A stretch of DNA of 64,000 bases from contig NW_026928842.1 in NCBI RefSeq assembly GCF_032062105.1, positions 62,001 to 126,000 of the forward strand, in the 5' to 3' direction. The position numbers and the translations under genes were made by a program. Positions 12,201 to 62,558 of this stretch are shown piece by piece. The notes beneath the pieces are model-generated. The model did no database searches and had not been told where the DNA came from. It saw only the letters and a program-made list of their open reading frames with translations. Positions within the stretch are counted from its first letter, which is position 1. Each line of letters begins with the position of its first letter. Source of the DNA: Saccostrea cucullata (Eukaryota).

Positions 12201-13193
12201 GTTAAATATCTCTAAAATTCGCATAAACATTTTCGTATTTGTTAATTTTGAAATTATCCTATTTCTTTTACAAATACAGATAACATTGAAAAAGGCGAAC
12301 CTTTTCAGCAAGAGGTGTTAAAACGAAGACGTCATGTTATTGGAACCGATAACCATCCCATCATTGGGTCAATCATGAACAATATGGGTGTAATGTATGA
12401 AAGAAAGAAAGATTTTCGTAAGGCTGCTGAATATTATCGAAACGGACTTAAGATCAAAGAAGAAACAAATGCGCCACTAAAGGCAATTATAATATCTGAA
12501 ACAAATGTAGCCCGGAGTTTACTAGAAAGTGGACAGGCCGAGGAAGCAATTATTCTGCTGGAGAATAGTTTCAAGCGTCTCGATGATTTTCCATCTCTTT
12601 TTAGCGATGCAAAATCTTTGCTTTGGGAAGCAATGGGCAACGCATTTATTAAGTTGAACAATTTTGAGGAGGCAGCGGAGTCTTTCAAGAAAGCAATAGA
12701 ATATCGATCTCACAGTTCTGCCATGGATCATTCTATTTTAGGTTTGGTATGTTTGTATGCCAAAAGTCTACTGGCGTTGGCTGAATATGAGAAAGCTATA
12801 AAGGAAATAAAGAAAGGTCTTTGTTTATGTGACTTAATCATTAAAAATAACCCAACGAATCCTACTATCATTCTAACATATGAGAAGTTAATGGAAGCGC
12901 AATTTGCTTTAAAGAGGAGAAAGGACTTGGAGAAAACCTATGAAGGTGGAATAGCCGAATTCTATCGGTTGATTAAAGTGTACGAGAATTTGAAGAACTT
13001 CAATAAAAGGCAGGATGTGTTGGACCATCTTCGGAAGTTCAAAGCAAGATATGCTGAAATGCTTGCACAGTTAAATGGTGAAATACCCGTTGAAGGCTGC
13101 ACTAATAATATAGTAACTGTTGTATCATTTTGTACGCTGAGAGTTATTTGTGTGGTGTTTCTGTATGTGTGCATGAAAATTAAAGAACAATAA
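9246..13193 (+). CDS. NB-ARC-like STAND ATPase + winged helix + TPR repeat protein, copy 2 (~823 aa, 8 exons, hydrophobic C-terminal tail)
   Basis: Exons 9246-9942, 10172-10285, 10365-10508, 10698-10934, 11056-11168, 11455-11603, 11908-12011 and 12280-13193, all GT-AG, total 2472 nt in frame. Motifs: FIGRRSEL, Walker A GLKGIGKT, Walker B IIVFDNAE, CEGLPLAL, RFDIHGILR, and kinesin-light-chain-type TPRs (HPIIGSIMNNMGVMY..A..YY..GL.IK). Confidence 0.9.
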
Positions 13194-14153
13194 CTCTAAA
13201 TCTGTTTAAAGAGATATTTGATTACATTTACAAAAATGTCCAGCATTATTTTCAGATTTGTAATAATTATCTTTATGTGCTTTTGACTGAGGGTGTACAA
13301 ATGATTCAATTAGAAGGACTTGTCAACATGTATCATGATAGTGGAATCGAAGGCTGCACTAAGGACCAACATTTTTACCCTTTTGGCTCTGAATAAGCGG
13401 ACGTTCTTACATCTCTCCAAGGGGTAGACATATATGTTACGATATGAATTTGAATGCAGTGATATTGCAGAAACCATGATTATAATAATACTTACGCCAT
13501 ATTTAAATTGCCAATAAAGCTTGGAACTTTGACCAGTGCGTACAGTCCGAGTAATCTATTGAATTCTTTTCTCACTTTTGAATTATTGAACACAAAAGTA
13601 TAAATAGTTTTCATATTCATAAGATGTTCCCGAAAACATCTTTAAGTGTTAAGCACTATGAAAAATACAAACCCATTCTACATGATTTTTTTTTAAATTT
13701 GCGTAATTTACTTTATTTATCATATTTTCTGACAAGAATGCATATCATGTATAATTTCTTAGCATCATTTACAGATATTTTATTTGGATACATGGCATGT
13801 CAAATCAACATCATTCTAATAACGAGTCTGTGTCTAAAATGATCCATAAATCACGTGTTCAATATTCACATCAATTCATTGAAAATACTATTTAAGATTA
13901 GCGAACATAGATCTTCTTCTAGAGCATGATATTTATATTCAGTAAGTGAGTACATTTTTCAAATATTCTAACAAATCATGTGATGGGGTCCATGCTTTCA
14001 TCAATTCACTGAATGTGCGGTACTTTCTATTCAATTCTGCTTCTGCTTTTGCATTTCGATTTCTCCTACAAAACAAATATAGAAATATATATTGACACGA
14101 CGTCTTATAAAAACACTTGACAAACATAAACAAATCAATAATTGTAACCTTAC

Positions 14154-14425
14154 GTTGAATCCTCCTATGCCACCGGTACTGTTGAACATATCCGACAGCT
14201 TTTAAATCAACATGTTTTAAAACATCTATCAAAAATCCTGTATTTAATAATCTATGCCTCCGAAGATAGTCAAAATCCTCTTCAATAGAACTATTGTTGA
14301 GTACCCTTGATTGAAGGCATTTCATTAATTCTTGTTTCCACGCCTGGAAATTCTCTCCATTGTATTTGCTATCGTCCAAGTATCTTTTAGTTAAGGTATT
14401 TAATATCTCAGTTTCCTTAAAGAAT
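14154..14425 (-). CDS. Coding exon with death-effector-domain (DED)-like pattern; gene limits unresolved
   Basis: TTTTACAG acceptor (14426-14427) and C|GTAAGG donor after 14154. The peptide ...LMKCLQSRVLNNSSIEEDFDYLRRHRLLNTGFLIDVLKHVDLKAVGYVQQY fits the DED helix 4-6 hydrophobic pattern (F..L....L....L.D.L..V......V..Y) by eye only. Confidence 0.4.
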
Positions 14426-15719
14426 CTGTAAAAGTCAGTAAGAATAGAGCAAATTCGAACATAAAGAGGTATGATGTGAATGCAATTATGCTGATCATTT
14501 TTAAATAAAGTTTTCTTATTATATGATAGTATTATTATAATTTGGAAGGTCGAGAGAGAGAGAGAGAGAGCAAATGCATAACTAGGGCTAATTGTAACGG
14601 GGACCGTTACAGATGTTCCCCAAACGCTCCCCATGTCCCTTTTCGTGCCATAGCTTTTCCTGTAAGACCTTTTATAAATATACTAAGCATTTAAGGATTT
14701 CATTGAAAGATATAAAAGTTACAATGATATCAACTATATATCGTTTAATGTTTTGCATGGGCGCACACGTACATGTACATGCATCAAACTCCATACAGTG
14801 TCGTTATACGAATAACGCCACTGCCACAGGCTTTCCAAACTTTTTCCAAAATCTGGAAAATTGGTTGAACTAGGTCATATCAAAAGGCCTGTGGCAGCGA
14901 TGATATGGAGTTGTAGCGTAACGTAATAAGCTGTTTGGAGCTTGGTACATTGCATATGCAAGATGATCATGGCATGTTGGTTAAGCGATTAACACAGAGA
15001 TACAGAAAGTTACCACATTTCAAGTATATATCATTTTTTGAGATTTTAAGAGAGAGAGAGAGAGAGAGCTAACCAATCAAAATGAAAGTCAATTTTAGTT
15101 CCATGCATAGAAAAGGGATTTTCCTTTAATCTGTTCAGATTTTTTTTATATATATCTCCTCTCTGGTCATTTTGACAACTCTGGTACCTGTGCCTAGTAA
15201 ATTTTATATACTATGTAAATAAATATATACATGTACATGTAAAGGTTTTTGACCGGAACTATTTATTTTTTCCAATGCATTGGAGGCTACTTTCTGGGGT
15301 TTACAATAGATATTCATAAAGACATTCGTATCAGCTAATGTGACCAATATTCTTTAAGACCCTCTTATTAATATATTTTTTGATATTTTTTTTACGAAGG
15401 GGCGTACATGTATATTGATTTTGAATTTCTGGGGATTGCGTAATTCTAAAAGAAATCAATTAAATTTCAAAGGTTAAATAAACAAAGGATGCTTGGTATT
15501 AAAATATTGTTTCAAATCAGTAGAATTGAATGCTATTAACGACATCCGAATAAATACATGTAAACATAGAAGGCTTATATACCAACTTTGTTCATCTGTA
15601 CTTTAATTTCAAACACGACAGGATTTGTAATTAATGAAATTAATAATTTCTATATACTTTGGAAACTCACATCAAATATTTTAATACTCTTTCTTCGAGC
15701 TCTTTTCTGCAGTTTCCTT

Positions 15720-16655
15720 AAGATGTTATGTGGATCCGAGGTGTAATTTGAGCTTTACAGCGATTCTCTACTTTGTGTGTGTGGGGGGGGGGGTCTTTCT
15801 ACCCTTGGGTTAAGGTCAAAGGTTAAGGTCGATTTCAAGTTCATAGGTCAAGGTCATTTTGGTAAATAGCTAATATCAACATTTTATTCAGGTTACTAGT
15901 GACCTTGACCTAAGTATCAAGGTCAAGGGTAAAAAGATCTGCTTCAGTATGTTACATGTCTTTACATTTAGAAGTTCTTAATTCTGCATGAACATCAAAA
16001 GACTTAAGTATACTGTCGTTTAACGCATTGTGTGTGCGCGCATATGCATGACGTCCTTGAATTTACTTTTGATGGTAGAATAATGTAGGCATTCATTATA
16101 TCTATTCATATTCGAAATTTCACCCTGTATTATTGAGAACTAAGAAAGTTTTAGGCATTTAAACTTTTAGCCAATCAGATTGCAGCACACGTGCATGTGC
16201 GTGCGTTCATGATTATTCTTATACATCATGCTGTAGATCTTCATAATGTATGACTATGTTCAAAATTTCAAAGGATTTTGTCAGAAAACAAAAAAGATAT
16301 AAAGACTTTAGTTTCAGCCAATCGGAACGAAGCGCACGTGCATGCGTGTGAGATCTTGCTATTTTGACCATGTCATCATGTCTATACTACTATTATATCC
16401 TTATATTATGAGTTTCAAAGCATTTCATCAAAAATTTAAAAGGTTACGGCTATATCTATCATATTGGTCATTTCACGCGTTACACGTGTGCGCACATGCA
16501 CGCACGTGCGCGCAAAATGACCTTCGTTCCGCACATCTACATAACATACCTAGTGACCCTAAAAGGTTTCACCTAGATCGGATGAGTAGTTTCTCGCGGA
16601 CAAAAAAAGTACCGGAGAAGAAAATTCTCAATATGTTCCCAAACTTCGTTTCATA
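15720..16655 (+). mobile_element. Degenerate Helentron/HINE-like element
   Basis: Repeated GGTCAAGGTCA/TGACCTTGA and GCACGTGC motifs, with a 3' end resembling other HINE ends (CAATATGTTCCCAAACTTCGTTT). Confidence 0.4.
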
Positions 16656-17459
16656 ATTAAAACTGGGTGAGATCGAACAAAAATTGCTTCCAAATATTCT
16701 TCTTAGTTATATTCCGTTTACATAAAATGCGTAATAGGGAAAGTAACTAAAATGATGCCAATTATTAAATAGAGAAAGAAAACAAAATAATACTGTGATT
16801 TGATAGAGAAAAAAATATCTACTCACAAATATACGTATGCCATAATTTCCATACACGAATCATTTAAACCCGTTTATCTTTTTTCGTCTTTGAATCTTTT
16901 CTCTCTCGAGTTGATCTCTCTTCTTATCTTAAAAATCAATATGCATACAAAAGATTAAAAAATTTTCAACAGATTCAAACCATGCAATTGCACTGATAAA
17001 TTCCTTAATAGTTAAGTATACAAACTGAACATGTATTTCATGCGTATTTAGAAATTACATGCATAAAATTTGTTCACATTCAATTTTGAAAAATTAAGAA
17101 ATTCATAAATAATTATATATATATATTTTAAAAAGGATATGTCTTAATTTCCTAAATAGATCGTGTGGAAGAAAAAAAAAACTATGGAAGTTTTTTTTTC
17201 CAATAAACGTATTGGTACAAATGAAATAGTTTTATTTTACATTTAACTAAAAAGTGTAAGCTTATTTTTTTAAATTAATTGTTGTAAGGATAAAATGAAT
17301 ATTAATGTTAAAAATATACATAAACGAAGTATTTGTTATTTAAAAATAATACATATATTAGTAAGAGTATTCGTCAGAAAAACAGGCGAATATTTTTTCG
17401 TAAATAAAAAAGTATACAAGAGTAAAATTTATTAAAAAAATTAATTTGAAGATAAATTG

Positions 17460-17830
17460 TTTTTAGTTAATCTAAGTCGAAAGCTTAACTGAACCTTTTC
17501 TGATCAAAACGTTGTTGTTGTTGTTTTCATGACCTTGTCACATTTTCATCTTCCAGACCCAACAGCATAATTCCAAACAAACGTAGCATACTTTATCCTT
17601 GGGTAATGTTTAAACTAAGGGCCACACCATCCTTCATTGGGGGATAATTACAAAAAGGAAACAATAGGTGGGATCAATTGAAAATCTGCTCAAGAACCAC
17701 TGGACCACATGTGAGTTTGTTTAACTCATGATCTCCCAAAATAGTTACGTCTTTAGGAACGATTATAGGGAGTACATTTGATAACTATTGACTCAAAACT
17801 TTTTTACTTAGGAAATACCAAACTTAAAAA
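17460..17830 (-). mobile_element. Degenerate fragment of the Cg170-carrying Helentron family
   Basis: TTTTAG...GAAAGCTTAACTGAACCTTTTCTGATCA...CACATTTTCATCTTC...CTCAAGAACCACTGG is a diverged reverse complement of the 3' end at 1070-1206. Confidence 0.5.
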
Positions 17831-18460
17831 TTGTCTTCATTACGAAAATAATGAAGGAAAGTCTTTCCACCCCCCCTTTTTTTTTTTACAGATATTGACA
17901 GTGTGTCTTTTCTAATGAGCAACCATTAGCATGTAATATGATGTTGTTTTAGTACTCATTTGATTACAGTGGTGCTCTTTCATTTCTATGATAAACACAC
18001 AGGTTATTATTAACATTCTTTATAATTTATGAAAACATAATTAAAACGTACGATTTTTTTAGCAATGTGAATTCTTTGCAGAAATGAACATTTTTTCTCG
18101 ATTGTTAAGAATGATTAATAACGTCCGTTATAAGGCTGATAAATTCTCAATTATTGAAGCAGGATTGCTTTCACAGGAAAACGCAGATTCATACAAAGAG
18201 TTGTTATAGGATATCCTTCAACAAGGAAATCCTTTTTTTTTAATTCTCAACCCACAAAACCTATGTTCAGGGTCAAGTATTTTCTAAGTCATAAAATATG
18301 TATTATTTGCAGAAATGAGAGGACCTTACTAGGAAGTATATTGTATTTTTAACGCTAAATCTAAATCTTTTTACTAAATATTGCGTTAGTGCTGCTTGAG
18401 TTGTTGCACTCGATTACATAACGACAGCGTATGACCTTGATTTCAAGGTGATGAAGAAAA

Positions 18461-21400
18461 ATGGCGATCTTTGTGGGTAGACGGAGGGAGTTGGAAGAAT
18501 TACGAGAAATGTGTCGTTTTTCTGATTTGATTTTGATCCATGGATTGAAGGGGATAGGAAAATCATCTTTTGTAAAACAATTTTGTGAAAATATAAACCA
18601 CATTTTTATCGACGTTCGGCGGAGAGAGGAAGATCCTTTACAACTAATTGAAATGTTAGAATCAGAAGTAGGAGGGATCCGAAGAATAAAGAACTGTGAG
18701 ACAAATAAACCATCCGTTGAAAATAGCGATTTATTAAAAACTGATAATGCTTATTCAGCAAGTAACCGGAGACAGGAAATCGAAATGCTTTTAGTTTTGG
18801 ACAATGCAGAAGAAATATGCATCGATTCAGGATCAATTTCCACATTGACTTCCATTTCCACATTATCTGGTGTGACAATTTTGATTACATCAACCTTCTG
18901 TCCTGTCGAGATGAATGAACAGATAATAGAGCTACCTTTAAAACCCCTTTCACACACTGATGCTCATGAACTTCTCAAAACTATTTGTCCCTCAATGGAA
19001 GAAGATAATTATTTTGTGTGCAAAATTATTGAATTGTGTGAAGGGATTCCACTTGCTCTCCAGATAGTAGGGTTAGAATTAGAAAGTAGATTACTTACAC
19101 CAGAAGATCTGGTGATTCTTCTCACTAAGTCCAGACTGAAGGTATTAAGTCAAGAGTATTTTCCAAAAAATGATCAGATAGGTAATATTTTTTTCAATCT
19201 TTGTTAAATGACTAAGAATGTGTTTATTTTGTCTATCGCACAATACCTAGTTGCGTTTAATTTAAAATGTAAAAAGTACCGCCGTCTAAACAATTGACAA
19301 ATACTAAAGTTTATAAAATACATGAGATATTGGCAACATTTGATAATTTGATTTAAGATTTTTTTTTACTAATGGGATAGATATTGTTGAAATCTTATTG
19401 AATGAATGAGTGGTTGTTTGCTTGTTTTAATTTTTACGTCCCATTTGATAATTTTTCACTCATGAAGATATATTTCTATATCCGGTGAAATGCCAACTCA
19501 TTCATGGGGGAAATCTGTTTGAAACTAAATAGTTAAAATGCTTTACTTGTTCTCCTATTGCAGACTCAACTTACAGAGAATTTCTAAATAGGATATCTGA
19601 ACCATTACAAGACGCGCTATCGACATTAAATTATATTCCAGGGACTTTTAACGCGCATGAGGCTTCCAGCATTTTGGGTACGTACAAAATCTATTACCTG
19701 AAGTGATTCACCTCTTTTCTGAAATCATTTTCCAGGTAGAAATATTAGGCAAATATATATCCATTCTTTAAAATCTTCTATAACTTGGTAAACCATATAT
19801 TCGCTTTTTGATATCACTTAGTGTCAATCAGCATCCGAGACTTATCTTTTGGTTATTTCACTTCAAATCTCTAAACATTTTTTTTTTTAAAATAAACAAT
19901 CGATGTTGTTTTACAAGTTCATCTTTGCATTTCATTTAGGTGTTGACAATGTCAACATTAATAATACTCTACGTAGCTGTAACCAATATCATCTGATCTT
20001 TAAGAGTGAATCTGCCAATAGATACGACATCCATGGGATATTGAGAGATTGTGTGAAGGAATTCATTAAAATAAAGCATTTACCAAGTAATTATACGAAT
20101 AGAAGTGATTGCATGAGTCTTAAACATGTATCGTTGCTTAAGGTTTCAAACTGAAATATTCAGTATTGTATTATAAAAATTATAAAATTCAGTCAGTTTC
20201 AATCGCCTCAATTTTAGGTGTTCGAAAGAGATTTTGTGAAACTTTTTCAAGGATTTTACAAGAGATTGAATCACGATCCAGCACTGAGGATTACTGTTGG
20301 GCCATGAGTCAGTTTAGTTTAGAATATGGTAATATCTGGAAACTGTTTAAAGAAGTGATTAATTGCCCCTCGGACTGTTATCACGTGTTTGTAGAATTAG
20401 CCACCACGCTTACCATAGGGAGGGTCCTGCTGAAAACAATGACACTATATCGTAAGTCTGTAACTTCATAAATCGGTGTCTGTTTTGAATTTATCGTATA
20501 AACTTTAATATGTATATTGTTTTAACTAACCAACAGAAGCAATGATTGAATTTTTCGGCCATTGTCTAGAAAGAACTAGGTTGTTTGGGCAAGAACTAGA
20601 CGAAGCTAGAGTACTATCAGGATATGGACGAGTTCTTACAAATATTACGGTAAAATATTACAAGAATCATGTGAAAGACGAAGGAATACGAAATTTATTC
20701 CTATAATAAATCAAATCAATTTTAAACGCTTCTAAAATACAATACTAGTATATATATTTTTTTCCAAAACCTTCATATAAAATCATTTTCTGCAACCATA
20801 AAAAAAAAATTAATTGGGAAAAGTTGTCAAATGTTTCTTTTACATCCATCATTATAATATAATTGGTTTAAAGGTCAGTTTCTGTTTGCAAAAATTTCCT
20901 TTACTTATTAAAACAAAAATGTTCAAAGGCAAAGTATGAATTTTTATCCCAATATGTTCTACAGGGAAACTTAGTTGAAGGTGCTGAGATGTATCAACGA
21001 GCGTTAGATATAAGGAGACGTCATCCCAAGACTCGTGATTATCATCTGGCCTTTCTTCTTCAGAGCTATGGATGGAACCTTGGAATGCAAGGAAAATACA
21101 AGGCTTCTTTAAAGTATCTTTCATAAAAGATTTCAAACAATTATTTTTATGAATTTTTTATGTATGAATTTATTATGTAGGAATTTTGACTTTTGTTTAG
21201 GTACCTGAGAGAGGCTTATTGTGTTGAACAAGGTTTAGGAATGTACTCCGAAAGACTCATTTTACAGACATTGCAATCTTTGGCCTTATTCTACATATTT
21301 TCGGGTAAGAATTTTAAAAAGAAATATAAGCATGATGGTGGGATCTTTTTGATCTTTAAGCTAAGCATATATTTCTTTCATGATTATTTTTTAATTGCAG

Positions 21401-22200
21401 ACGATATTGAAAATGGCGAACAGTTTCAGGTTGAATGTTACAAAAGAAGATTAAAAGCAATAGGGACGAAAAATCACCCAATAATGGGGTCTACGCTAAA
21501 CAACATGGGTTGCATGTTTTTAAGAAAAGGTGACATAAATACAGCACTCGACTATCAAAGACAAGGTTTAGAAATAAAGATTTCAACAGGAGCCCCAGTG
21601 AAAGACATAGCTCTCTCTGAAAGGGATCTTGCAGAAACCATTTTAGCTAAAGGAGACTATAGTGAAGCCATTACACTGTTGGATCAAGCGCTCACTCGTC
21701 TACAAGGATTTCCCGGACTTTTTGATGACGCCAAGGTCTTGTTATTAAAAACAAAAGGGAAATGTTATTTCAAAGCACGTGCATATTCTGAAGCAGGTAG
21801 ACATTTCCAAAAGGCCATTGATCTGAAATTGAAAACATGCGAAGAAGATAGCTTTATGGTAAAATTATATTGCTTATATGCAGATGTTCTCCTTGCTCTT
21901 GGAGAAAATGCAAAGGTGGTCAGAATATTGGAAAAGGCCCTTTTTAGAAAAGACAGTTTCATTCAACAGACACCTACAAATAAAAGTTTATTTCATTCAT
22001 ACAGAATTTTACTCGAGGCACATTTTTCTTTAGGGAACAGGGAGGAATTGTTTAGAACATATTATGATGGATGTTTTGAATTGCAAAGACTGATTAAGGT
22101 TTTTGAAGAAGTTCCGAATTTTTATAGAAGAGCGGAGATGTCAGAAAATCTTCAAAAATTCACAGAAAGATTTAAAGAAATGAAAAGATTTTTAGATTAA
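18461..22200 (+). CDS. NB-ARC-like STAND ATPase + TPR repeat protein, copy 3 (~793 aa, 8 exons, no hydrophobic tail)
   Basis: Exons 18461-19181, 19564-19677, 19940-20086, 20218-20451, 20537-20649, 20965-21113, 21201-21304 and 21401-22200, total 2382 nt in frame. Motifs: FVGRRREL, GLKGIGKS, LLVLDNAE, CEGIPLAL, RYDIHGILR and TPRs. Same intron phases as copy 2. Confidence 0.9.
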
Positions 22201-28450: not shown

Positions 28451-31400
28451 TCACAGATTATCATAGGAAGACAATGGGCGCACGTCTGAATTACTGCCTC
28501 CTTCGCCTTGCTTTATCTCTTTAGATTTTGGTCTAGATTTCCGATTTGATTGTGACCGTTTTGGGGTTGACTTTGGAGTTGTTTTTCCTACTTCATTTTT
28601 CGTGGGACGGTCCTTCTTTGGGAACGGGGACACGGGTCTAGGGTTTCCTCCTGAGGCTTCACTTCCGGGCTTTTCTTCCTCACTGTCATGTTCTATTGAC
28701 ATGTATTTCTGTCGAATGTACACGAAAGGTTTCGATTTCTGTGGCTTCATCGGTTCCGTGTCCGGAGGAGGATTTGCTTTCGGAAGCTGTTTTGGTTCTT
28801 TACCATGTGTTTTTGGTAGATTTTTGATTGGATCGGGATCTTTTTTCTTCTTCGAGAAAAGCTTTTGCATAAAGCTCACATTAGAAGAACTGGCCTTTTT
28901 CTGCGATTGAGGTTTCTTTGCTGAATCCTCCTCTGCCTTCCCTCTTTCCTTAGGAAGGGAAGAGGGAGTTTGATTAGGATTAATTTTCAAAGACGAAAAG
29001 TCCATTTTGGCGTCATTCGAAATAAATGAACTATCTGAGTTGCACGAAATAAATGACGCCGTTGATTCGGACTCTGTTGAGGATGGCCTTGAAGTACCCG
29101 TAGCCTTTGGAAATTTTGGTTTTACAACAGGCGTTATATCCAATGAAGTGTTACTACCTGTGTGAACAGGAATACGACTTGGGGATTTATTATGCTGTTT
29201 CTGATTAATCTTATATTTCTTGTTCGGTACCGTCGCAATTTTTCCTGGCGCTGAATTATATCGGGGCATTTGATTGCTGTTGTTTGTGTTCCCAGGTAAC
29301 ATTGTCTCATTTCCCCCAGTATCACGAGGAAGAATATCACTTTTATTGAGGGACTCTTCTGGAGGTAGCAGTGTCTTTCCTTTCAATGTTGTTATTGGTT
29401 GTGGTTTTCTGTCCCCCTTTTTAGCTTTTCCAACATCGTTGGATTGTGCTATTAACTGTTGGACATTTTTCTGTCGTTCTTGTTCCGTTGCGTCAATAAC
29501 GTCATTTGAGTTCTCTTTAGAAGACAGCTGATCTTCCGATGAACTTTTCCAAGGTACATCCGGCATATTTTTTTGAGTAGGACTTTGTAACCGCTGTGAC
29601 ACCTTTTGTAATTTTGAAATGCAAGCCGCCATTTTTCCTTCCGCGACAGAGTTTGTTTCTGTGAGGGTGGATGCATCAGATACCTCTATCTTGGGAGTCA
29701 TGGTGAGTTTATTTGCTGTATCATGTACTGTCTTATTCCCGAAAACATTTTCAGCTATCTGTCTGGAATTGCTGAAAGTACTTGTAGCTTTATCGGATTT
29801 TGCAATGTAAAATGTCATTGTCCCTTTCGAAAATAGATGCCGAATTGGTGTGGACGTTTCTTTTTCAAATGTCAGTTTTGGAAGAGTGTTAGTGCCTACA
29901 TCAATTATCTCCTTTCCTTCCTTGTCCTTCCTTTTCGAATGCTTCCATACTTCTGACTCATTAAGTTCAACTTCGTTTGCTTGGGGAAAAGGAATAACGA
30001 ATGTCTGCGTGGCAGTCTCGGTATCTGGAGCAAAATCCGTTGATGTGTAATCATCCACCATTTCAATTGGATCACCAAATTCGTCTATAGATGGTTCCGA
30101 TGACACAAGATCAAATGCAGATTCGGGGATAAGAAAGAGTTCGTCTCCTTCTAATTCACTCAATAAACCGATGTACGGTAACGATTCGGTTGATGTTGCC
30201 ATATCACAATATTCAATTGGTCTTTGATCAAAATCACGCGAAGTACCTATTGACTTGTCAAAGAGATTAATCATAGAGGTTTGTGTTGAAGTTTCTGTGA
30301 ACATTAGAGAAGACTGGCCAAACGACATAGCCATAGTACCACGGTCGTGTACATCAGGTGGTGAAGGATTTGTTGCTGTATCAACCCTTTGTACAAATTC
30401 TTCTAGGCTCACGTTTGTTGACTTGTGCTTTGGAGTTGAGCATTTTCCAAGATACATGTCTGTTAGCGATCTACTCTCTGGTAACATATCTGATGTACCT
30501 ACACTGGCATCGATGATTTGTTTTATATCAGTGCTTGTCTCTTTTGTTTCCGTCATTAAATCTACAAATGTTTGAGCATCCTGGCACTTTAATCTTTCGG
30601 TCAATGTTTCATTATCTTGAACAACAAGTGTGGTCTCAGTTGTCGAGTCTTTTAACTTGACAGTTTCTGTATGTGTTGCTTGGTCCATCAGTATTAAGGG
30701 GTTTGTCTCCACACTAGAATCTATTGTTGCCGGCCGAGGCGGAGATATGCCTGTACTGACCAAAACAGGATTATGTGTTTCAGTCCATTGGTCTGTAGTT
30801 GTTGATTTAGTAGTATTTGTTTCTTTATCTGAAAACACAGCAGAGAATGTCTCTGTGCTTGCTTCTACCATTGTGGGACTCAGAGGTGGTAGCATTTCTG
30901 TTAAACTCGACTGACTGGAAAGCCTATCATTCGAACCTCGACTATCTACGGATCCTTTTCCTTTGAATAGTTTCAGTAGACCACCATGCCAAGATTTTCT
31001 ATTTTCAGAAGATCCCGATGGTTCCCAATGATCAGTCTGAATACAAGAATTTGACATATTTATTGGTTGTGTTAAAGTATTCATGTCTTGTTGGTTGGGT
31101 TTTACTTGCAAACCCTGATCTGAGACGGAAATTGGCGTCATTTCCGTCACTGCATCTGCCTTCTCACAAACTACAGTAAAGGTTGACCTATCAGTTGTGG
31201 ATGGCGGATCTGTCCAGGTCTCAACAGAAGAGTGACAGATCGTCGGCATGGTGGTTTCACTGTCCATAAGAGAGACTTTAACGGTAGCCGTGCTTTTATC
31301 TGTTTGTCCAGCATAATCGGTCCCAATTTTCTTAGTGGACTGAATCACTTTCGGAGTTTGTGTATCACATGTTTTATTTTCTACTTTGGTTTGCATTTCT

Positions 31401-33217
31401 GAGTCTCTTGTACGGGGTGAATTGGTGACAGTAGATGCATTTCTAGTTGGCACGACTGGTTTCATTTCCATAGTTGTCATTGTCGTTGTATCTCGAGTAG
31501 ATATCTTATGTTTCTTTTCATTGATACACTCTAAAATGATCGGATCCAGAGCTATTGTTCTTGTTTCTCGCTGAGGCATGCCTGTCATTGCACCACAAGA
31601 AAGGCTTCTTTCTGGTATATGTCGCAAGTTCGGAACAGAGAGACTCATTTCGTCTACACTTTCATTTGACATGGAAAGATCAGTTTGAACTCGCCTACTC
31701 CGTATCAAACTTCGTCTTCTCCGCCGCCATTCTTTGGGATTTCCCTCTGCCGAATCAAGGACAATAACATCTTGAACACAAGGGGCAGTGTTGAAATTTG
31801 ATGAGGCAATGTTGACCTCAGATTGTAAATCTTGACAGCATTTCACACAAATACCGGAACCTTTAGAGCCAACATTTGAAAAGGTTTGCATACAAGCATC
31901 AACGGTTGGAACTGGTGTCAGGGAACGAAGGCTACTTTGCGAACCCATTTTATGTCCGTAGTAGTTTGTGACCTCTGAAGTGTAACTGATTTCCATTTCA
32001 GATGCCACAGAACCAGTTTCGGAGAAGCTTTGTATGCTACTTTCTTTTGAACGCTTGGCCCATTCCTCATTTGCAGAGTCGTCAGTCTGGCATCCAAATG
32101 AATTCTTCTGCAGATCCATTGAATATTCTGAATTTTCATTTTCATCGGAATTACCATTGAATGTGATCTTTCCGAATTTTATTCCACCTGGAACAAATCT
32201 AATTTTAGTTGTAAAGTTGGTTACATCTTCTGGAGGTTCGGGAAGAGTGGGTTCTAAAAGCGATACTAGTTTGTTCTGCATCTCTTTCTTTAATAGTAGC
32301 ATTTCAACACCTTTGTCCCTCATTATAATATCTGTCAAGTTACACGCATTTTGAAGCCCGTCTAAGTTTTCTTGGAGCCAGTCTTTATTTTCAAGAAAAG
32401 ACATGATGTTTTCACCAAAATAAGATTCAACTTCTTTGAGCAGCTCTTTTTCAGTTGATCGCACTTGTTGGATATAACTAATAGCCAGGTCTCGTATATT
32501 TTCTCTCGTCTCCTTCAGAATCGTTTCACATTGATTCATAATACTGATTCGATCTTGGACAACCTCGTATCTGCTTCTACAGTTATTCAACAATGATTCC
32601 ATGGAGGATTTATATTTCGAGTATCCTTCGTTGAATGAACATATTTCATGGTCCCGATGTTCCTGAAAAGTGCATACAACACAAATACAGGCATCACAAG
32701 GTTCGCAGTAAAATCGAACAATTTCATCTGGATGAACTTTACATTCAATATCTTTTTCTCCCTCAACATCAATCAAGCTATGATTCTGCGTGACTTTTGT
32801 TGTTAAATGTAATTCAACACAGGCCTTACATAGCAATTTTGAGCAATCTAGGCACTTTGAACATGCATCGTTGCTTCTTGGTCTAACAGTATGGCAAATT
32901 TCACATGGTGGGATTTTCAGTGGTCTTTTTCTGTCAATCACTTCCGTCAGATTGGCCAATAAAAAATTATCTGGAAGACGTCGAACTCCACCTGTAGGAA
33001 TTTCTGTTCGTTTGCGACATAGGGGACAGGTGACGTGGCGGTTGTATAAAGAGTATCGAGAACGCGTGTTTTCCGAATCCACATGCTGCTGAATACATTC
33101 TGAACAAAACGTATGTAAGCACGTTAGTGTTTTTGGGCTTTTGTATGGTTCCAAACATATTTTACAATGAAGGAATTGGTCACTAATTTCCTGCATCAGC
33201 TTCATATTCGTAGCCAT
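28451..33217 (-). CDS. Intronless TRIM/RBCC E3 ligase (RING, B-box1, B-box2, coiled coil; TRIM2/3/56-like N-terminus) with a ~1200-aa repetitive, disordered C-terminus, 1588 aa
   Basis: RING CKIC...CLHTFCSEC...CPLC followed by LPDNF. B-box1 CEIC...CLDC...C..C...H; B-box2 CKVH....FYCEPC...C..C...H..H; helical coiled coil. First ATG at 33215-33217 (the track's start at 33241 is GTG). No NHL, filamin or SPRY domain recognisable. Confidence 0.92.
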   Translation of the reverse strand: MATNMKLMQEISDQFLHCKICLEPYKSPKTLTCLHTFCSECIQQHVDSENTRSRYSLYNRHVTCPLCRKRTEIPTGGVRRLPDNFLLANLTEVIDRKRPLKIPPCEICHTVRPRSNDACSKCLDCSKLLCKACVELHLTTKVTQNHSLIDVEGEKDIECKVHPDEIVRFYCEPCDACICVVCTFQEHRDHEICSFNEGYSKYKSSMESLLNNCRSRYEVVQDRISIMNQCETILKETRENIRDLAISYIQQVRSTEKELLKEVESYFGENIMSFLENKDWLQENLDGLQNACNLTDIIMRDKGVEMLLLKKEMQNKLVSLLEPTLPEPPEDVTNFTTKIRFVPGGIKFGKITFNGNSDENENSEYSMDLQKNSFGCQTDDSANEEWAKRSKESSIQSFSETGSVASEMEISYTSEVTNYYGHKMGSQSSLRSLTPVPTVDACMQTFSNVGSKGSGICVKCCQDLQSEVNIASSNFNTAPCVQDVIVLDSAEGNPKEWRRRRRSLIRSRRVQTDLSMSNESVDEMSLSVPNLRHIPERSLSCGAMTGMPQRETRTIALDPIILECINEKKHKISTRDTTTMTTMEMKPVVPTRNASTVTNSPRTRDSEMQTKVENKTCDTQTPKVIQSTKKIGTDYAGQTDKSTATVKVSLMDSETTMPTICHSSVETWTDPPSTTDRSTFTVVCEKADAVTEMTPISVSDQGLQVKPNQQDMNTLTQPINMSNSCIQTDHWEPSGSSENRKSWHGGLLKLFKGKGSVDSRGSNDRLSSQSSLTEMLPPLSPTMVEASTETFSAVFSDKETNTTKSTTTDQWTETHNPVLVSTGISPPRPATIDSSVETNPLILMDQATHTETVKLKDSTTETTLVVQDNETLTERLKCQDAQTFVDLMTETKETSTDIKQIIDASVGTSDMLPESRSLTDMYLGKCSTPKHKSTNVSLEEFVQRVDTATNPSPPDVHDRGTMAMSFGQSSLMFTETSTQTSMINLFDKSIGTSRDFDQRPIEYCDMATSTESLPYIGLLSELEGDELFLIPESAFDLVSSEPSIDEFGDPIEMVDDYTSTDFAPDTETATQTFVIPFPQANEVELNESEVWKHSKRKDKEGKEIIDVGTNTLPKLTFEKETSTPIRHLFSKGTMTFYIAKSDKATSTFSNSRQIAENVFGNKTVHDTANKLTMTPKIEVSDASTLTETNSVAEGKMAACISKLQKVSQRLQSPTQKNMPDVPWKSSSEDQLSSKENSNDVIDATEQERQKNVQQLIAQSNDVGKAKKGDRKPQPITTLKGKTLLPPEESLNKSDILPRDTGGNETMLPGNTNNSNQMPRYNSAPGKIATVPNKKYKINQKQHNKSPSRIPVHTGSNTSLDITPVVKPKFPKATGTSRPSSTESESTASFISCNSDSSFISNDAKMDFSSLKINPNQTPSSLPKERGKAEEDSAKKPQSQKKASSSNVSFMQKLFSKKKKDPDPIKNLPKTHGKEPKQLPKANPPPDTEPMKPQKSKPFVYIRQKYMSIEHDSEEEKPGSEASGGNPRPVSPFPKKDRPTKNEVGKTTPKSTPKRSQSNRKSRPKSKEIKQGEGGSNSDVRPLSSYDNL

Positions 33218-49288: not shown

Positions 49289-50455
49289 ATGAACGATGCA
49301 ATATCAGAATTAAGAAAACGCGGAAAGAAGAAAAGTAAAATAGAACAACTTCTCTTGGTGGACCACAGTAATATATATTTTGAAAATGAACGACTTGCAG
49401 AACGTCTCGCTAAGTTCTTGGATGAACTTCACAAAGACAAACATAGACAGGAGATGGTCCGCAACATTGAGATCCAAGAGCTCAAACGGGAAATTGACAA
49501 CCTTCAGGCAATGAAAGATGCCTCGTCAGCACAGACCAAGAAGTTCCTACAAACTCTAGAGAATTATTATACATCTAGTGCAATACCAAAACCTGAGAAG
49601 AAAACCAGACCTCACACTACTGGAAGTTACTTCAAGAAGTCACGTGCCAAATCAGAAGAGCGGGAACGGACAGAGAAACCAAAAAGCAAAACAAGAGCAG
49701 TCAGTGCCAGTAGACACGAAGAATCAGTAAGTGAAAAAGAATTCGAAAGAGCGAAGAAGCGCGAAAAACGTGCCCCTGCAGACGACACAAAAACTGATGA
49801 TCAATCCGAAGGTGACAAAAAGAGCCGTACTTTAAAATACCCAGAAGACTGGTATACAACTGTGCTACCTGCCTCTGACAATTGTTTAAAGAAAATTCGA
49901 CAACAATACAGAAGGGAGCAGACTGCTCCAACAATAACATTATCAAAACGATCAAAAAAGTCTGACAAATCTAAAGATAGTGCAAAACCTCAAACTAGTA
50001 CTGCCACTGGGCAAAGAGGTCTAAGTCGAGAAAAGACTGAAGACATGAAACAAAGATCAGGAGTAAATACGGCAGGGAACCGGAAGAATTCTGTTGCAAC
50101 GGAAGTGAGCAAGTCAGACATTGACGAAGAGATAGAGTCAAAATCCCGAATCAAAATGGTTTGCCAGCAAAAGTCAAAACCGGTGATGATGTCTTTGAGA
50201 CAAATGAGAGAGTTAACAGGAATGGACGGAAACAACGACAACATGCCAAACAAAAGGCAGGAAAGACTAGACAAACAAATACAGGAAACGAAAGTCAAAT
50301 TTCTATCGTTAACTCAGAGGGTTAAGACATTTGTTAAGGAACTGGACGAAAAAATTGCTCAAGATTTAGAAGACTCTAAACCTAAGGAGAATGAATCTCA
50401 TGACGATATGTATTCTGGAATATTGCCACCAGATCAGGACGCTGTGCCAACTTAG
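49289..50455 (+). CDS. Uncharacterised 388-aa protein: N-terminal coiled coil (weakly CCDC190-like pattern), K/R/S/T-rich disordered middle, C-terminal helix
   Basis: Long uninterrupted ORF in AT-rich DNA. Acceptor TTCTAG at 49254 upstream of the ATG at 49289, and AATAAA at ~50686 and ~50918. Family not firmly recognised. Confidence 0.75.
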   Translation: MNDAISELRKRGKKKSKIEQLLLVDHSNIYFENERLAERLAKFLDELHKDKHRQEMVRNIEIQELKREIDNLQAMKDASSAQTKKFLQTLENYYTSSAIPKPEKKTRPHTTGSYFKKSRAKSEERERTEKPKSKTRAVSASRHEESVSEKEFERAKKREKRAPADDTKTDDQSEGDKKSRTLKYPEDWYTTVLPASDNCLKKIRQQYRREQTAPTITLSKRSKKSDKSKDSAKPQTSTATGQRGLSREKTEDMKQRSGVNTAGNRKNSVATEVSKSDIDEEIESKSRIKMVCQQKSKPVMMSLRQMRELTGMDGNNDNMPNKRQERLDKQIQETKVKFLSLTQRVKTFVKELDEKIAQDLEDSKPKENESHDDMYSGILPPDQDAVPT

Positions 50456-61600: not shown

Positions 61601-62442
61601 TTTACACACAATTTTTTTTTTCAAGCGATCCAAAAGCCTGTGAGTTATATATACATTTAGCTGTAATCCACAATGGTTCGTGTGGCGGTATTTAGGGAAA
61701 TGTGTTGTATAAAGCAAACAAACTCATATCAATTATTGAAATAAAACCCATGAAGAAATAAATTTCTGGGTCATGGGTATGTGCAAAATCCAACAAAAAT
61801 TTAACATCCTTTACAAGTTTAAATATTAACGTTCAAGGCTCAATATCCATGGACTGGTGTTTTTATACTATATTCAGAAAGCTAGCTTAATTCTTTATGT
61901 TCAAAAGTCTTGAATTTAACAGCACGCATTTATATATTAATACAAATAATTAAGTACAAGTGAAAAATAATTTCTTCCCTTTAATAAAAAGAAAATAGGA
62001 TGTTCCTTATTTAGTTTACCTGTAAAGAAAGACTTTGGTTATGTTTACATCTAGGAGTGATAAACGAGTTATCTCCCTTGAAACGCAATGCATGTGTATT
62101 TTGCATGTTTACATCCCCAAATCAAGTATAAGCACCAGTGTCACGTCGAGTTGAAATATTTGGAGATAAATATGAAATGTTCTTCTCAAATATGTCTAAT
62201 GATTATTCCTGTACCGGATAGTTTAAAGTACAAACCTCCCTCCTCTTTTTCTCTATGAAAGCTAATGGTGCTATCCCAAACTCAAAAGCACATCCTAACC
62301 ATGGAATCCAACCTTCATACGATGGCGGGTATTTGTTATTTTGCAGTCTTTTCCTATATAAAAAGAAGTAAATAATCGAGAGAGCAAGAATTAATGAAGT
62401 TAAAAGTGTCGCAGGTTCAAGCGAAAGTGAAAGCACTTCCAT
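52613..62442 (-). CDS. CYP39A1: Cytochrome P450, CYP39A1-like (24-hydroxycholesterol 7-alpha-hydroxylase family), 13 exons; exon 8 anomalous
   Basis: Exons 62236-62442, 61382-61517, 60988-61137, 60799-60896, 60619-60701, 59902-59989, 59269-59364, ~59088-59174, 56496-56626, 56167-56262, 53168-53256, 52947-53037 and 52613-52687. Motifs: N-terminal TM + GWIPWLGCA, FEYG, LLWASLANAVP, EAVRL (ExxR), heme FGGGRYQCPGR and HVVGTQQP. Confidence 0.88.
53618..53837. mobile_element. PIF/Harbinger-like MITE
   Basis: TIRs GGGCCCGCTTTATAAAA / TTTTGTAAAACGGGCCC with a 3-bp CTG duplication, splitting a minisatellite unit. Confidence 0.75.
54471..54607. repeat. 137-bp hairpin at the end of a repeat-element fragment
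   Basis: TAAATATTGCATGTAGTTG..AACATTGAAAATT.TCACCCC..GAAAACCATTGTCAACC, a loop, then GGTTGACAATGGTTTTC..GGGGTGA.AATTTTCAATGTT..CAACTACATGCAATATTTA. Confidence 0.8.
61532..61650. mobile_element. Small hairpin MITE remnant in CYP intron 1
   Basis: AGGCCTTTAGATCGCTT.GAAAAA vs TTTTTCAAGCGATCCAAAAGCCT inverted arms. Confidence 0.45.
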
Positions 62443-62558
62443 GTTCGGTGAACTGTTTGTCCGAGGAGTTCCAAAGGGCACCTGACAATGACCTTCACCT
62501 TGTAACAACGTGAAGCTCTTCAACGAGATACGACAGATCGATTTAGAAAGAAGTCAAA
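62443..62558. promoter_or_regulatory. Putative bidirectional promoter / overlapping 5' UTRs of CYP39A1-like and OSCP1
   Basis: The divergent start codons are only 116 bp apart. Confidence 0.6.

What the first reader, a model, noticed from the sequence alone, without database searches (positions are those of the whole stretch)
29640..32100. TRIM E3 ligase with about 40 TQT-like motifs at ~12-aa spacing: candidate extreme multivalent LC8 (dynein light chain) scaffold
Seen: after the RBCC module the protein is not random low-complexity sequence. It repeats [D/E/N/T]-x-x-[T/I/V/M]-[Q/x]-T units, e.g. SFGCQTD, DACMQTF, RRVQTD, DTTTMT, NASTVT, DSEMQTK, TCDTQTP, DKSTAT, DRSTFT, NSCIQTD, EASTET, DKETNT, DQATHT, DSTTET, TKETST, ETSTQTS, DKSIGT, DMATST, ETATQTF, DVGTNT, EKETST, DKATST and DASTLT. 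I counted roughly 40 by eye, mostly 11-13 residues apart in the core (~30500-31510). Known: LC8/DYNLL binds (D/S)KxTQT-type anchors, favours Asp at -4, and zips disordered partners such as ASCIZ/ATMIN, Nup159 and KANK into ladders. TRIMs of this N-terminal type usually end in filamin/NHL domains. Inference: the substrate-binding domain has been replaced by a very long LC8 ladder, possibly giving an LC8-concentration-tuned ubiquitin ligase or a rigid spacer rod.
Basis: partly seen in the sequence, partly recalled or inferred. Interest (0 to 1): 0.8.

Follow-up and report, generated by a model that had tools for sequence, protein, structure and literature searches.

The report
TRIM ligase with 40-rung LC8 ladder
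An oyster ubiquitin-ligase gene, conserved across molluscs, annelids, brachiopods and ribbon worms, has a floppy tail with about 40 evenly spaced docking sites that most likely bind the small hub protein LC8; if they do, the tail would form a jointed rod with more than twice as many LC8 sites as the best-loaded partner I found described.

Summary
A single-exon ORF (28451-33217, minus strand, 1588 aa, Saccostrea oyster) encodes a TRIM2/3-like RBCC with no filamin or NHL domain, followed by about 40 [D/E/S/T/N]-[K/R]-[G/S/A/E]-[T/V/I]-x-T units (26-28 by strict tests). The register is 12 aa: bare anchors pair at distance 12 in 322 cases against 20 expected in molluscs, and 229 against 31 in non-mollusc relatives. 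Spacing within blocks is fixed across Mollusca; hinges vary. With only two positions fixed, the flanks reproduce published LC8 rules. AlphaFold finds no fold. The oyster's own Kank has five such units at the same spacing, without homology. Only 3 units are true TQT, so this resembles KANK1's weak-site cooperative rod (15 LC8) more than ASCIZ's sensor. The ladder ends at a near-invariant helix, then a basic tail with SxIP. The long form is one clade, related to a short TRIM with 2-4 motifs found across protostomes. LC8 binding and ligase activity are inferred, not shown. I found no paper on the gene and no earlier scan note on it.

The parts
28451..33217 (-). Complete single-exon ORF, 1588 aa TRIM protein (P0001)
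   Evidence: RNA contigs of a related oyster cover it without intron joints
33017..33166 (-). RING C3HC4 (aa 18-67); the linchpin Arg68 follows directly
   Evidence: Pfam PF00097 E=6e-10; Arg at this position in 60 of 62 homologs
32780..32905 (-). B-box 1 (aa 105-146)
   Evidence: invariant or nearly invariant Cys/His columns
32636..32752 (-). B-box 2 (aa 156-194)
   Evidence: PF00643 E=4e-8
32168..32626 (-). Coiled coil and L2 linker (aa ~198-350), ending in the FxPG motif
   Evidence: match to TRIM3 8amr over query aa 148-332, E=1e-30
31679..32101 (-). Three isolated proximal xQT motifs (anchors aa 377, 444, 511); aa 511 is fully conserved, aa 444 poorly
31031..31492 (-). Block A: 12 units in continuous 11-12 aa register (anchors aa 597-727) plus one at aa 580
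30491..30865 (-). Block B: 11 units in continuous register (anchors aa 789-907), almost free of indels across Mollusca
30185..30388 (-). Block C: 5 units (anchors aa ~948, ~960, 979, 991, 1009); the register of the first two is uncertain by 1-2 residues
30107..30187 (-). Conserved acidic-hydrophobic insert (aa 1011-1037) inside the array, partner unknown
   Evidence: conserved columns; low-confidence short helix
29999..30055 (-). Block D: 2 units (aa 1059 and 1071, the latter a TQT)
29657..29902 (-). Block E: 4 + 2 units (aa 1110-1146, 1173-1185); the most conserved block
29579..29641 (-). Near-invariant amphipathic helix (aa 1193-1213, core CIxKLxxV) at a fixed distance after the last motif; candidate LC8-promoted coiled coil or partner site
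   Evidence: only confident element in AlphaFold; present in 49 of 50 mollusc and 16 of 18 non-mollusc long forms, with the last anchor at the same distance in 51 of 65
28454..29575 (-). Basic, Pro/Ser-rich C-terminal tail (aa 1215-1588) with mollusc-conserved short motifs
   Evidence: K+R 67 against D+E 42; alignment
29225..29263 (-). RxNSAP segment (aa 1319-1331), 14-3-3 mode-I-like site
   Evidence: 42 of 50 mollusc orthologs; function inferred from consensus only
29168..29179 (-). SxIP motif (SRIP, aa 1347-1350) in a basic Ser/Pro context; candidate EB1 / microtubule plus-end site
   Evidence: Sx[IL]P after RxNSAP in 30 of 50 mollusc orthologs, none in non-molluscs
28691..28873 (-). Two further conserved short segments (FMQKLF plus basic run at aa 1449-1460; PFVY segment at aa 1496-1509)
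   Evidence: PFVY-type in 46 of 50

Best explanation
A TRIM E3-type protein whose ~830-aa disordered tail is a hinged LC8 (DYNLL) ladder of the KANK1/Nup159 type. Shown: the RBCC, the array, the strict 12-aa register, flanks matching LC8 rules, predicted disorder and deep conservation. Inferred step 1: the RBCC coiled coil makes an antiparallel dimer, and the two tails leave near its middle (general TRIM architecture, partly from my own knowledge). Inferred step 2: a few canonical xQT sites nucleate LC8 binding, and runs of individually weak sites (8-aa motif plus 4-aa linker) fill cooperatively, zipping the two tails in parallel with stacked LC8 dimers. At about 3.5 nm per LC8 (KANK1: 15 dimers, 53 nm), blocks A and B would each be rods of about 40 nm, and the whole up to about 140 nm with flexible hinges. 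Inferred step 3: the last LC8 sits next to a conserved helix that pairs or binds a partner, presenting the basic SxIP tail to microtubules. The protein would then be a tether of fixed length that holds a RING module about 0.1 micrometre from a cytoskeletal anchor and assembles only when enough LC8 is present. The cellular site and substrate are unknown. The confidence given is for LC8 binding the array as a ladder; for the microtubule-tether role alone it is about 0.35.
For: Alignment-free pair distances of bare [TVIC]xT anchors peak at 12, 24 and 36 (322/225/164 against ~20 in 23 molluscs; 229/181/126 against ~30 in 13 non-molluscs). With only -1 and +1 fixed, the logo gives D/E/S/T/N at -4, K/R at -3, G/S/E/A at -2, 0-2% Pro from -6 to +1 and D/E/P at +2, the positional rules of PMC6607443. 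In-block spacing is 12 in 436 and 10-13 in 542 of 547 ortholog measurements, while most hinges vary about 1.3- to 4-fold. A PSSM built only from non-mollusc units finds 28 units in the query (shuffles 2.6) and 5 in oyster Kank (shuffles 1.0, max 4). Oyster Kank has five units at exactly 12-aa spacing yet no homology to the TRIM (E=0.29). Human KANK1 binds 15 LC8 through non-Q anchors such as VNT, TNT and TST with 3-4 aa linkers (PMC12803091). AlphaFold pLDDT is 39.8 and 44.1. Short paralogs carry canonical TQT-type sites right after the RBCC. An LC8 gene is present in the genome.
Against: No binding experiment or complex model. Many TQT peptides do not bind LC8 (PMC6607443). The units also prefer V/I at -8 and T/L/V at -6, and anchor pairs are enriched at distances 5 and 7; single-peptide LC8 rules do not explain this. 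The alignments behind AlphaFold were shallow (36 sequences). The Kank control rests on 5 units. SxIP is limited to molluscs and not universal there.
Confidence: 0.75

Rival explanations
1. The 12-mers fold or self-assemble without LC8, as a two-sided beta-solenoid or as an in-register beta zipper or fibril between the two chains of the TRIM dimer, with VxT and TxT as the two strands of each turn.
For: Strict period and intolerance of indels fit any stacked repeat; secondary beta-branched preference at -8/-6 and peaks at distances 5 and 7; low-confidence long strands in AlphaFold.
Against: No confident fold in two runs (pTM 0.17 and 0.22). Neighbouring units share little beyond -4, -1 and +1 (mean column identity 21%). 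Steps of 10, 11 and 13 and a Pro-rich unit (aa 823-834) are fixed inside block B. Isolated single units are conserved (aa 511). The short paralogs have only 2-4 scattered units, too few for a solenoid.
Confidence: 0.1
2. The array is a ladder for another dimer of the same fold class (Tctex/DYNLT, DNAL4 or a lineage-specific LC8-like protein) rather than, or as well as, canonical LC8.
For: The anchor lacks the Gln that LC8 prefers. Dynein IC-LC towers stack Tctex and LC8-like dimers on adjacent sites (PMC10886578).
Against: The flanking preferences match LC8 position by position, KANK1 shows that canonical LC8 accepts such anchors, and only one LC8 type was found intact in the genome (a lower bound).
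Confidence: 0.07
3. ASCIZ-like sensor: LC8 binds with partial, heterogeneous occupancy and tunes ligase activity or turnover according to LC8 level. This shares LC8 binding with the best explanation; the figure is for sensing being the main role.
For: Very many sites, mixed predicted strengths and several hinges; an E3 module could feed back on its own or a partner's stability.
Against: ASCIZ has strong sites with mismatched linkers. Uniform short linkers with weak sites give homogeneous saturated rods in KANK1. A sensor would not need spacing fixed across Mollusca.
Confidence: 0.15
4. Thr-rich low-complexity or mucin-like spacer, or an array of phospho- or O-GlcNAc sites, with no repeating partner (database names include 'mucin-4-like').
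For: Thr 17% and Ser 12% in the core; automated names.
Against: Motif counts and periodicity far exceed shuffles; motif Thr are conserved and other Thr/Ser are not (0.79 against 0.32/0.23); the N-terminus is a RING, not a signal peptide.
Confidence: 0.03

Closest known systems
KANK1 L2 linker-LC8 rod (PMC12803091, preprint)
   Same: Long disordered linker after a coiled coil; weak non-Q anchors; 11-12 aa pitch; blocks separated by hinges; proposed role as a rod of set length near microtubules
   Different: No homology; no KN motif or ankyrin repeats; about 40 candidate sites (about 50 in annelid and brachiopod forms) against 15; attached to a RING-B-box-coiled-coil module
Nup159 LC8 (Dyn2) domain, and dynein-2 / axonemal IC-LC towers
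   Same: Stacked LC8 dimers on two chains with short linkers (4-5 aa in Nup159) serving a structural role
   Different: Only 3-5 sites, strong and easily predicted in Nup159; no ligase module
ASCIZ/ATMIN (PMC5963919)
   Same: Many LC8 motifs in a disordered tail, conserved across animals
   Different: 11 sites (7 in fly), mismatched linkers, heterogeneous occupancy, transcription-factor sensor
Class VII TRIMs TRIM2/TRIM3 (PMC9732051), and invertebrate TRIMs auto-named TRIM56/TRIM45-like
   Same: Closest RBCC among solved structures; linchpin Arg kept
   Different: No filamin or NHL domain; two B-boxes; the long and short forms group apart from the other oyster TRIMs sampled
Short paralog (L002, G000:C12972, ~594 aa) and its orthologs from molluscs to flatworms, syndermatans and Priapulus
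   Same: 50% identical RBCC in one exon, no NHL, LC8-type motifs right after the RBCC
   Different: Median 3 motifs in a ~200-aa tail, with more canonical TQT sites; also uncharacterised as far as my searches show

Membership tests
TRIM/RBCC | RING with eight zinc ligands | tested here: met
   PF00097; C18, C21, C33, H35, C38, C41, C64, C67 invariant
TRIM/RBCC | One or two B-boxes followed by a coiled coil | tested here: met
   PF00643 plus conserved B-box 1 ligands; alignment to TRIM3 and TRIM28 coiled coils
TRIM/RBCC | E3 ligase activity | not testable with these tools
   Linchpin Arg in 60 of 62 homologs, but TRIM3 shows that such RINGs can be inactive (PMC9732051)
Class VII TRIM-NHL (TRIM2/3/32/71) | C-terminal NHL domain, usually after filamin | tested here: not met
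   No such Pfam hit in the query at E<=1 or among the precomputed domains of its homologs
Multivalent LC8 clients (KANK1/Nup159/ASCIZ type) | Motifs lie in a disordered region | tested here: met
   AlphaFold pLDDT 39.8 and 44.1; a prediction, from shallow alignments
Multivalent LC8 clients (KANK1/Nup159/ASCIZ type) | Thr/Val/Ile at -1, Thr at +1, polar at -4, large or basic at -3, no internal Pro, D/E/P at +2 | tested here: met
   Logo with only -1 and +1 fixed against the rules in PMC6607443
Multivalent LC8 clients (KANK1/Nup159/ASCIZ type) | Gln at position 0 (canonical strong site) | tested here: not met
   3 TQT and 8-9 xQT among about 40 units; also not met by KANK1, a proven binder
Multivalent LC8 clients (KANK1/Nup159/ASCIZ type) | Short uniform linkers and a nearby dimerisation element | tested here: met
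   12-aa pitch; RBCC upstream and a conserved helix downstream
Multivalent LC8 clients (KANK1/Nup159/ASCIZ type) | Demonstrated stoichiometric LC8 binding | not testable with these tools
   No multimer prediction, LC8Pred or experiment available here
KANK family | KN motif, ankyrin repeats, sequence homology | tested here: not met
Thr-rich beta-solenoids (e.g. 12-residue insect antifreeze proteins, recalled from memory) | Uniform Pro-free tandem repeats with a constant small inward residue and an autonomous fold | tested here: not met
   Position 0 variable, Pro at +2 to +4, no confident fold, no informative PDB match

The most novel reading that the evidence does not exclude
A spiralian TRIM uses 40-50 stacked LC8 dimers as a hinged molecular ruler of about 140 nm or more that separates an active RING ligase from a cytoskeleton-binding tail. 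This would be the largest LC8 assembly I found described and an E3 whose reach is set by a hub-protein ladder, grown by expansion from an older 2-4-site LC8 clamp.
Probability: 0.45. Interest if true: 0.82.

Novelty: new variant of a known kind. Interest (0 to 1): 0.68.

Why it matters
[quoted passage not shown] This gene appears to be an independent, convergent case that is much larger and conserved across several phyla. It comes with a natural series (2-4, about 40 and about 50 sites) that makes the pitch, cooperativity and length rules directly testable. It also supplies hundreds of natural non-Q motif variants for training LC8 predictors, and it joins an LC8 ladder to a TRIM ligase, a combination I found no report of.

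Tried and rejected
An ELM-style strict regex found nothing; rejected as a test because KANK1's sites are also non-canonical. A PDB search with the array profile gave only KHDC3/FILIA 12-mer repeats at E=0.31; not significant, and the paper checked does not mention LC8 or dynein. A PDB search with a 3-unit profile gave chance hits only, so it neither supports nor refutes; it did not recover dynein intermediate chains. The same profile on the genome found mainly this gene. ESM Atlas gave no usable hit. AlphaFold gave no fold for the array or block B, so no fold search was run. Literature searches for TRIM plus LC8 and for ortholog gene ids found nothing relevant. The mucin name was rejected. The careful tree did not finish; the quick tree was used. 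The big protein search was used once because the range claim rests on absence. Only 20 of its new hits were looked up and most had no name, so absence from vertebrates, insects and nematodes is not proven. An LC8-peptide complex could not be modelled because the folding tool takes single unchanged chains.

Full report
Gene and organism. The finding lies in one uninterrupted ORF on the minus strand, 33217 to 28451, 1588 aa. Its 90% cluster contains XP_061176454 of Saccostrea echinata, named 'mucin-4-like', so the window comes from a Saccostrea rock oyster; the species was not determined. Contigs from RNA libraries of a related oyster cover the whole coding sequence with no intron joints; contigs show presence, not level or tissue. 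Pfam finds a RING (aa 18-67) and a B-box (aa 156-194) and nothing after them. The best solved relatives of the N-terminus are TRIM3 and TRIM2 (E=1e-30 and 1e-22). A second B-box is evident from invariant Cys/His columns, and the linchpin Arg after the RING is kept in 60 of 62 homologs.

The observation. In aa 370-1200, [DEN]xx[TVIC]xT occurs 27 times against 5.2 in shuffles (maximum 14 in 5000). Only 3 units are literal TQT and 8-9 are xQT. There are 37 non-overlapping candidates, 26 with the +1 Thr conserved in at least 80% of 20 divergent orthologs. A hand-built list in register that adds non-canonical units reaches 40. The +1 Thr is conserved at 0.79 against 0.32 for other Thr and 0.23 for Ser in the region.

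The register. Without any alignment, and fixing only [TVIC] at -1 and T at +1, anchor pairs pile up at distances 12, 24 and 36. The counts are 322, 225 and 164 against about 20 expected in 23 molluscs, and 229, 181 and 126 against about 30 in 13 non-mollusc long homologs, which include Lingula and the annelid Paralvinella; most are unnamed. The mollusc sequences share ancestry and are not independent; the non-mollusc set is a partly independent repeat. The layout is three proximal xQT sites, one more site at aa 580, block A (12 units), a hinge, block B (11 units), and then shorter blocks of 5, 2 and 4+2 units.

What the units look like. The free positions reproduce the published LC8 rules. At -4 the residues are D41, E17, S15, T9 and N7%; at -3, K31%; at -2, small residues. 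Proline is almost absent from -6 to +1, and D/E/P lead at +2 (rules in PMC6607443). Position 0 is mixed (S, E, Q, M, N, A, G), so most sites should be individually weak. That is the design reported for human KANK1: anchors such as VNT, TNT and TST with 3-4 aa linkers, no binding as single peptides, but 7 and then 15 LC8 dimers bound cooperatively into a hinged rod of about 53 nm (PMC12803091, a preprint). As an in-genome control I fetched the oyster Kank exon. It has five such units at exactly 12-aa steps. A matrix built only from non-mollusc TRIM units finds 28 units in the query (shuffles 2.6) and 5 in Kank (shuffles 1.0, maximum 4). The two proteins are not homologous (E=0.29), so the match is convergent. 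An intact LC8 gene is in the genome.

No fold of its own. AlphaFold gave mean pLDDT 39.8 for aa 565-1215 and 44.1 for block B alone, with only low-confidence extended strands. The one confident element is a helix at aa 1193-1210. It is present in 49 of 50 mollusc and 16 of 18 non-mollusc long forms, with the last anchor at the same distance before it in 51 of 65 cases. Beyond it lies a basic Pro/Ser-rich tail with mollusc-conserved short motifs, among them RxNSAP (42 of 50) and Sx[IL]P (30 of 50). These point to 14-3-3 and EB1/microtubule binding by consensus only.

Evolution. Full-length orthologs occur in bivalves, gastropods, cephalopods and a chiton, and in Lingula, annelids and the nemertean Lineus. 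Among full-length long forms the rule-based count is mostly 24-40 in molluscs and up to 48-52 in Lingula, Paralvinella and unnamed relatives, generally above the shuffle maxima. The long forms are one clade in an RBCC tree (SH-aLRT 99, quick tree), and it follows the species tree. The closest paralog in the genome (L002, 50% identical RBCC) belongs to a short family with a median of 3 motifs in a ~200-aa tail and no NHL. That family is found in molluscs, annelids, nemerteans, brachiopods, bryozoans, Macrostomum, Seison, Pomphorhynchus and Priapulus. In the exhaustive search, full-length members score about 300-570 bits and generic TRIMs about 180-225. An Acanthaster protein at 256 bits is the nearest deuterostome hit that I could name. 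No vertebrate, insect or nematode member was seen, but few hits could be named. The simplest history is an old RBCC with a short LC8 clamp, duplicated in a spiralian ancestor, after which one copy expanded the clamp into a ladder; the root rests on distant outgroups.

Mechanism. TRIM coiled coils form antiparallel dimers (PMC9732051). That the C-terminal parts leave near the middle of the rod is my own knowledge of TRIM structures. LC8 binds two client chains in parallel, so it would zip the two tails from the RBCC outward. Twelve residues equal an 8-residue motif plus a 4-residue linker, the pitch at which LC8 dimers stack in KANK1 and Nup159. At about 3.5 nm per dimer, blocks A and B would be rods of about 40 nm each and the whole tail up to about 140 nm, jointed at the hinges and capped by the conserved helix and the basic tail. 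I put LC8 ladder formation at 0.75. The role as a tether of fixed length between a RING module and microtubules is more speculative, at about 0.35. One feature stays unexplained: the preference for V/I at -8 and T/L/V at -6. It may reflect packing between stacked LC8 dimers, or support the rival of a self-made beta structure (0.10).

Comparison and verdict. It is a TRIM, but not a class VII TRIM-NHL, not a KANK and not a mucin. It works most plausibly like KANK1 L2, with more than twice as many candidate sites as KANK1 (15), ASCIZ (11) or Nup159 (5). Searches found no paper on this gene or on an LC8-ladder TRIM, and no earlier scan note on it. It is a new variant of a known kind, well supported by sequence evidence and unproven at the bench. 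Interest 0.68.

Noticed in passing
window 8231-22200 (+): Tandem cluster of NB-ARC/STAND and TPR exons (NLR-like genes); Pfam confirms NB-ARC at 9231-10157 and 18461-19207 and TPRs at 8231-9124, 12315-13193 and 21193-22200. Already noted by the scan.
   Followed up: partly
L002:937-2724 (-), G000:C12972: Uncharacterised short paralog, RBCC plus about 4 LC8-type motifs (two xQT), conserved across Spiralia and in Priapulus; a candidate minimal LC8-clamped TRIM.
   Followed up: partly
L012:2829-5909 (-), G000:C13104: The oyster Kank exon carries about 20 LC8-like units of two kinds (RSVGVG-type and DSGTNT-type), suggesting that the KANK1-LC8 rod is conserved in molluscs.
   Followed up: partly
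PDB 12dl_LA / 24mc_O, KHDC3/FILIA aa ~130-370: KHDC3/FILIA of the oocyte cytoplasmic lattice has ~12-aa repeats of the EAATQP type, resembling LC8 motifs with Pro at +1 (E=0.31 to the array profile, not significant). A possible unrecognised LC8 ladder; the one lattice paper checked does not mention LC8.
   Followed up: partly
G000:C16637:556660-556911 and G000:C13725:32266-32517: Two LC8 matches with identical scores, probably haplotigs in a 1.17-Gb assembly, plus a third copy with an internal stop at C20884.
   Followed up: no
window 49277-50455 (+): 392-aa Lys/Glu/Ser-rich ORF with coiled-coil character and no Pfam match.
   Followed up: no
window 62203-62523 (-) and 13939-14634 (-): The first looks by eye like the N-terminal exon of a cytochrome P450 (membrane anchor then Pro-rich hinge), with no Pfam hit on this piece; the second is an unassigned 231-aa frame inside the NLR-like cluster.
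   Followed up: no
P0039 vs P0040 (Ostrea edulis), P0053 vs P0054 (Crassostrea virginica): Annotated isoforms of the orthologs differ only at the C-terminal end; the RBCC and the array are unchanged.
   Followed up: partly
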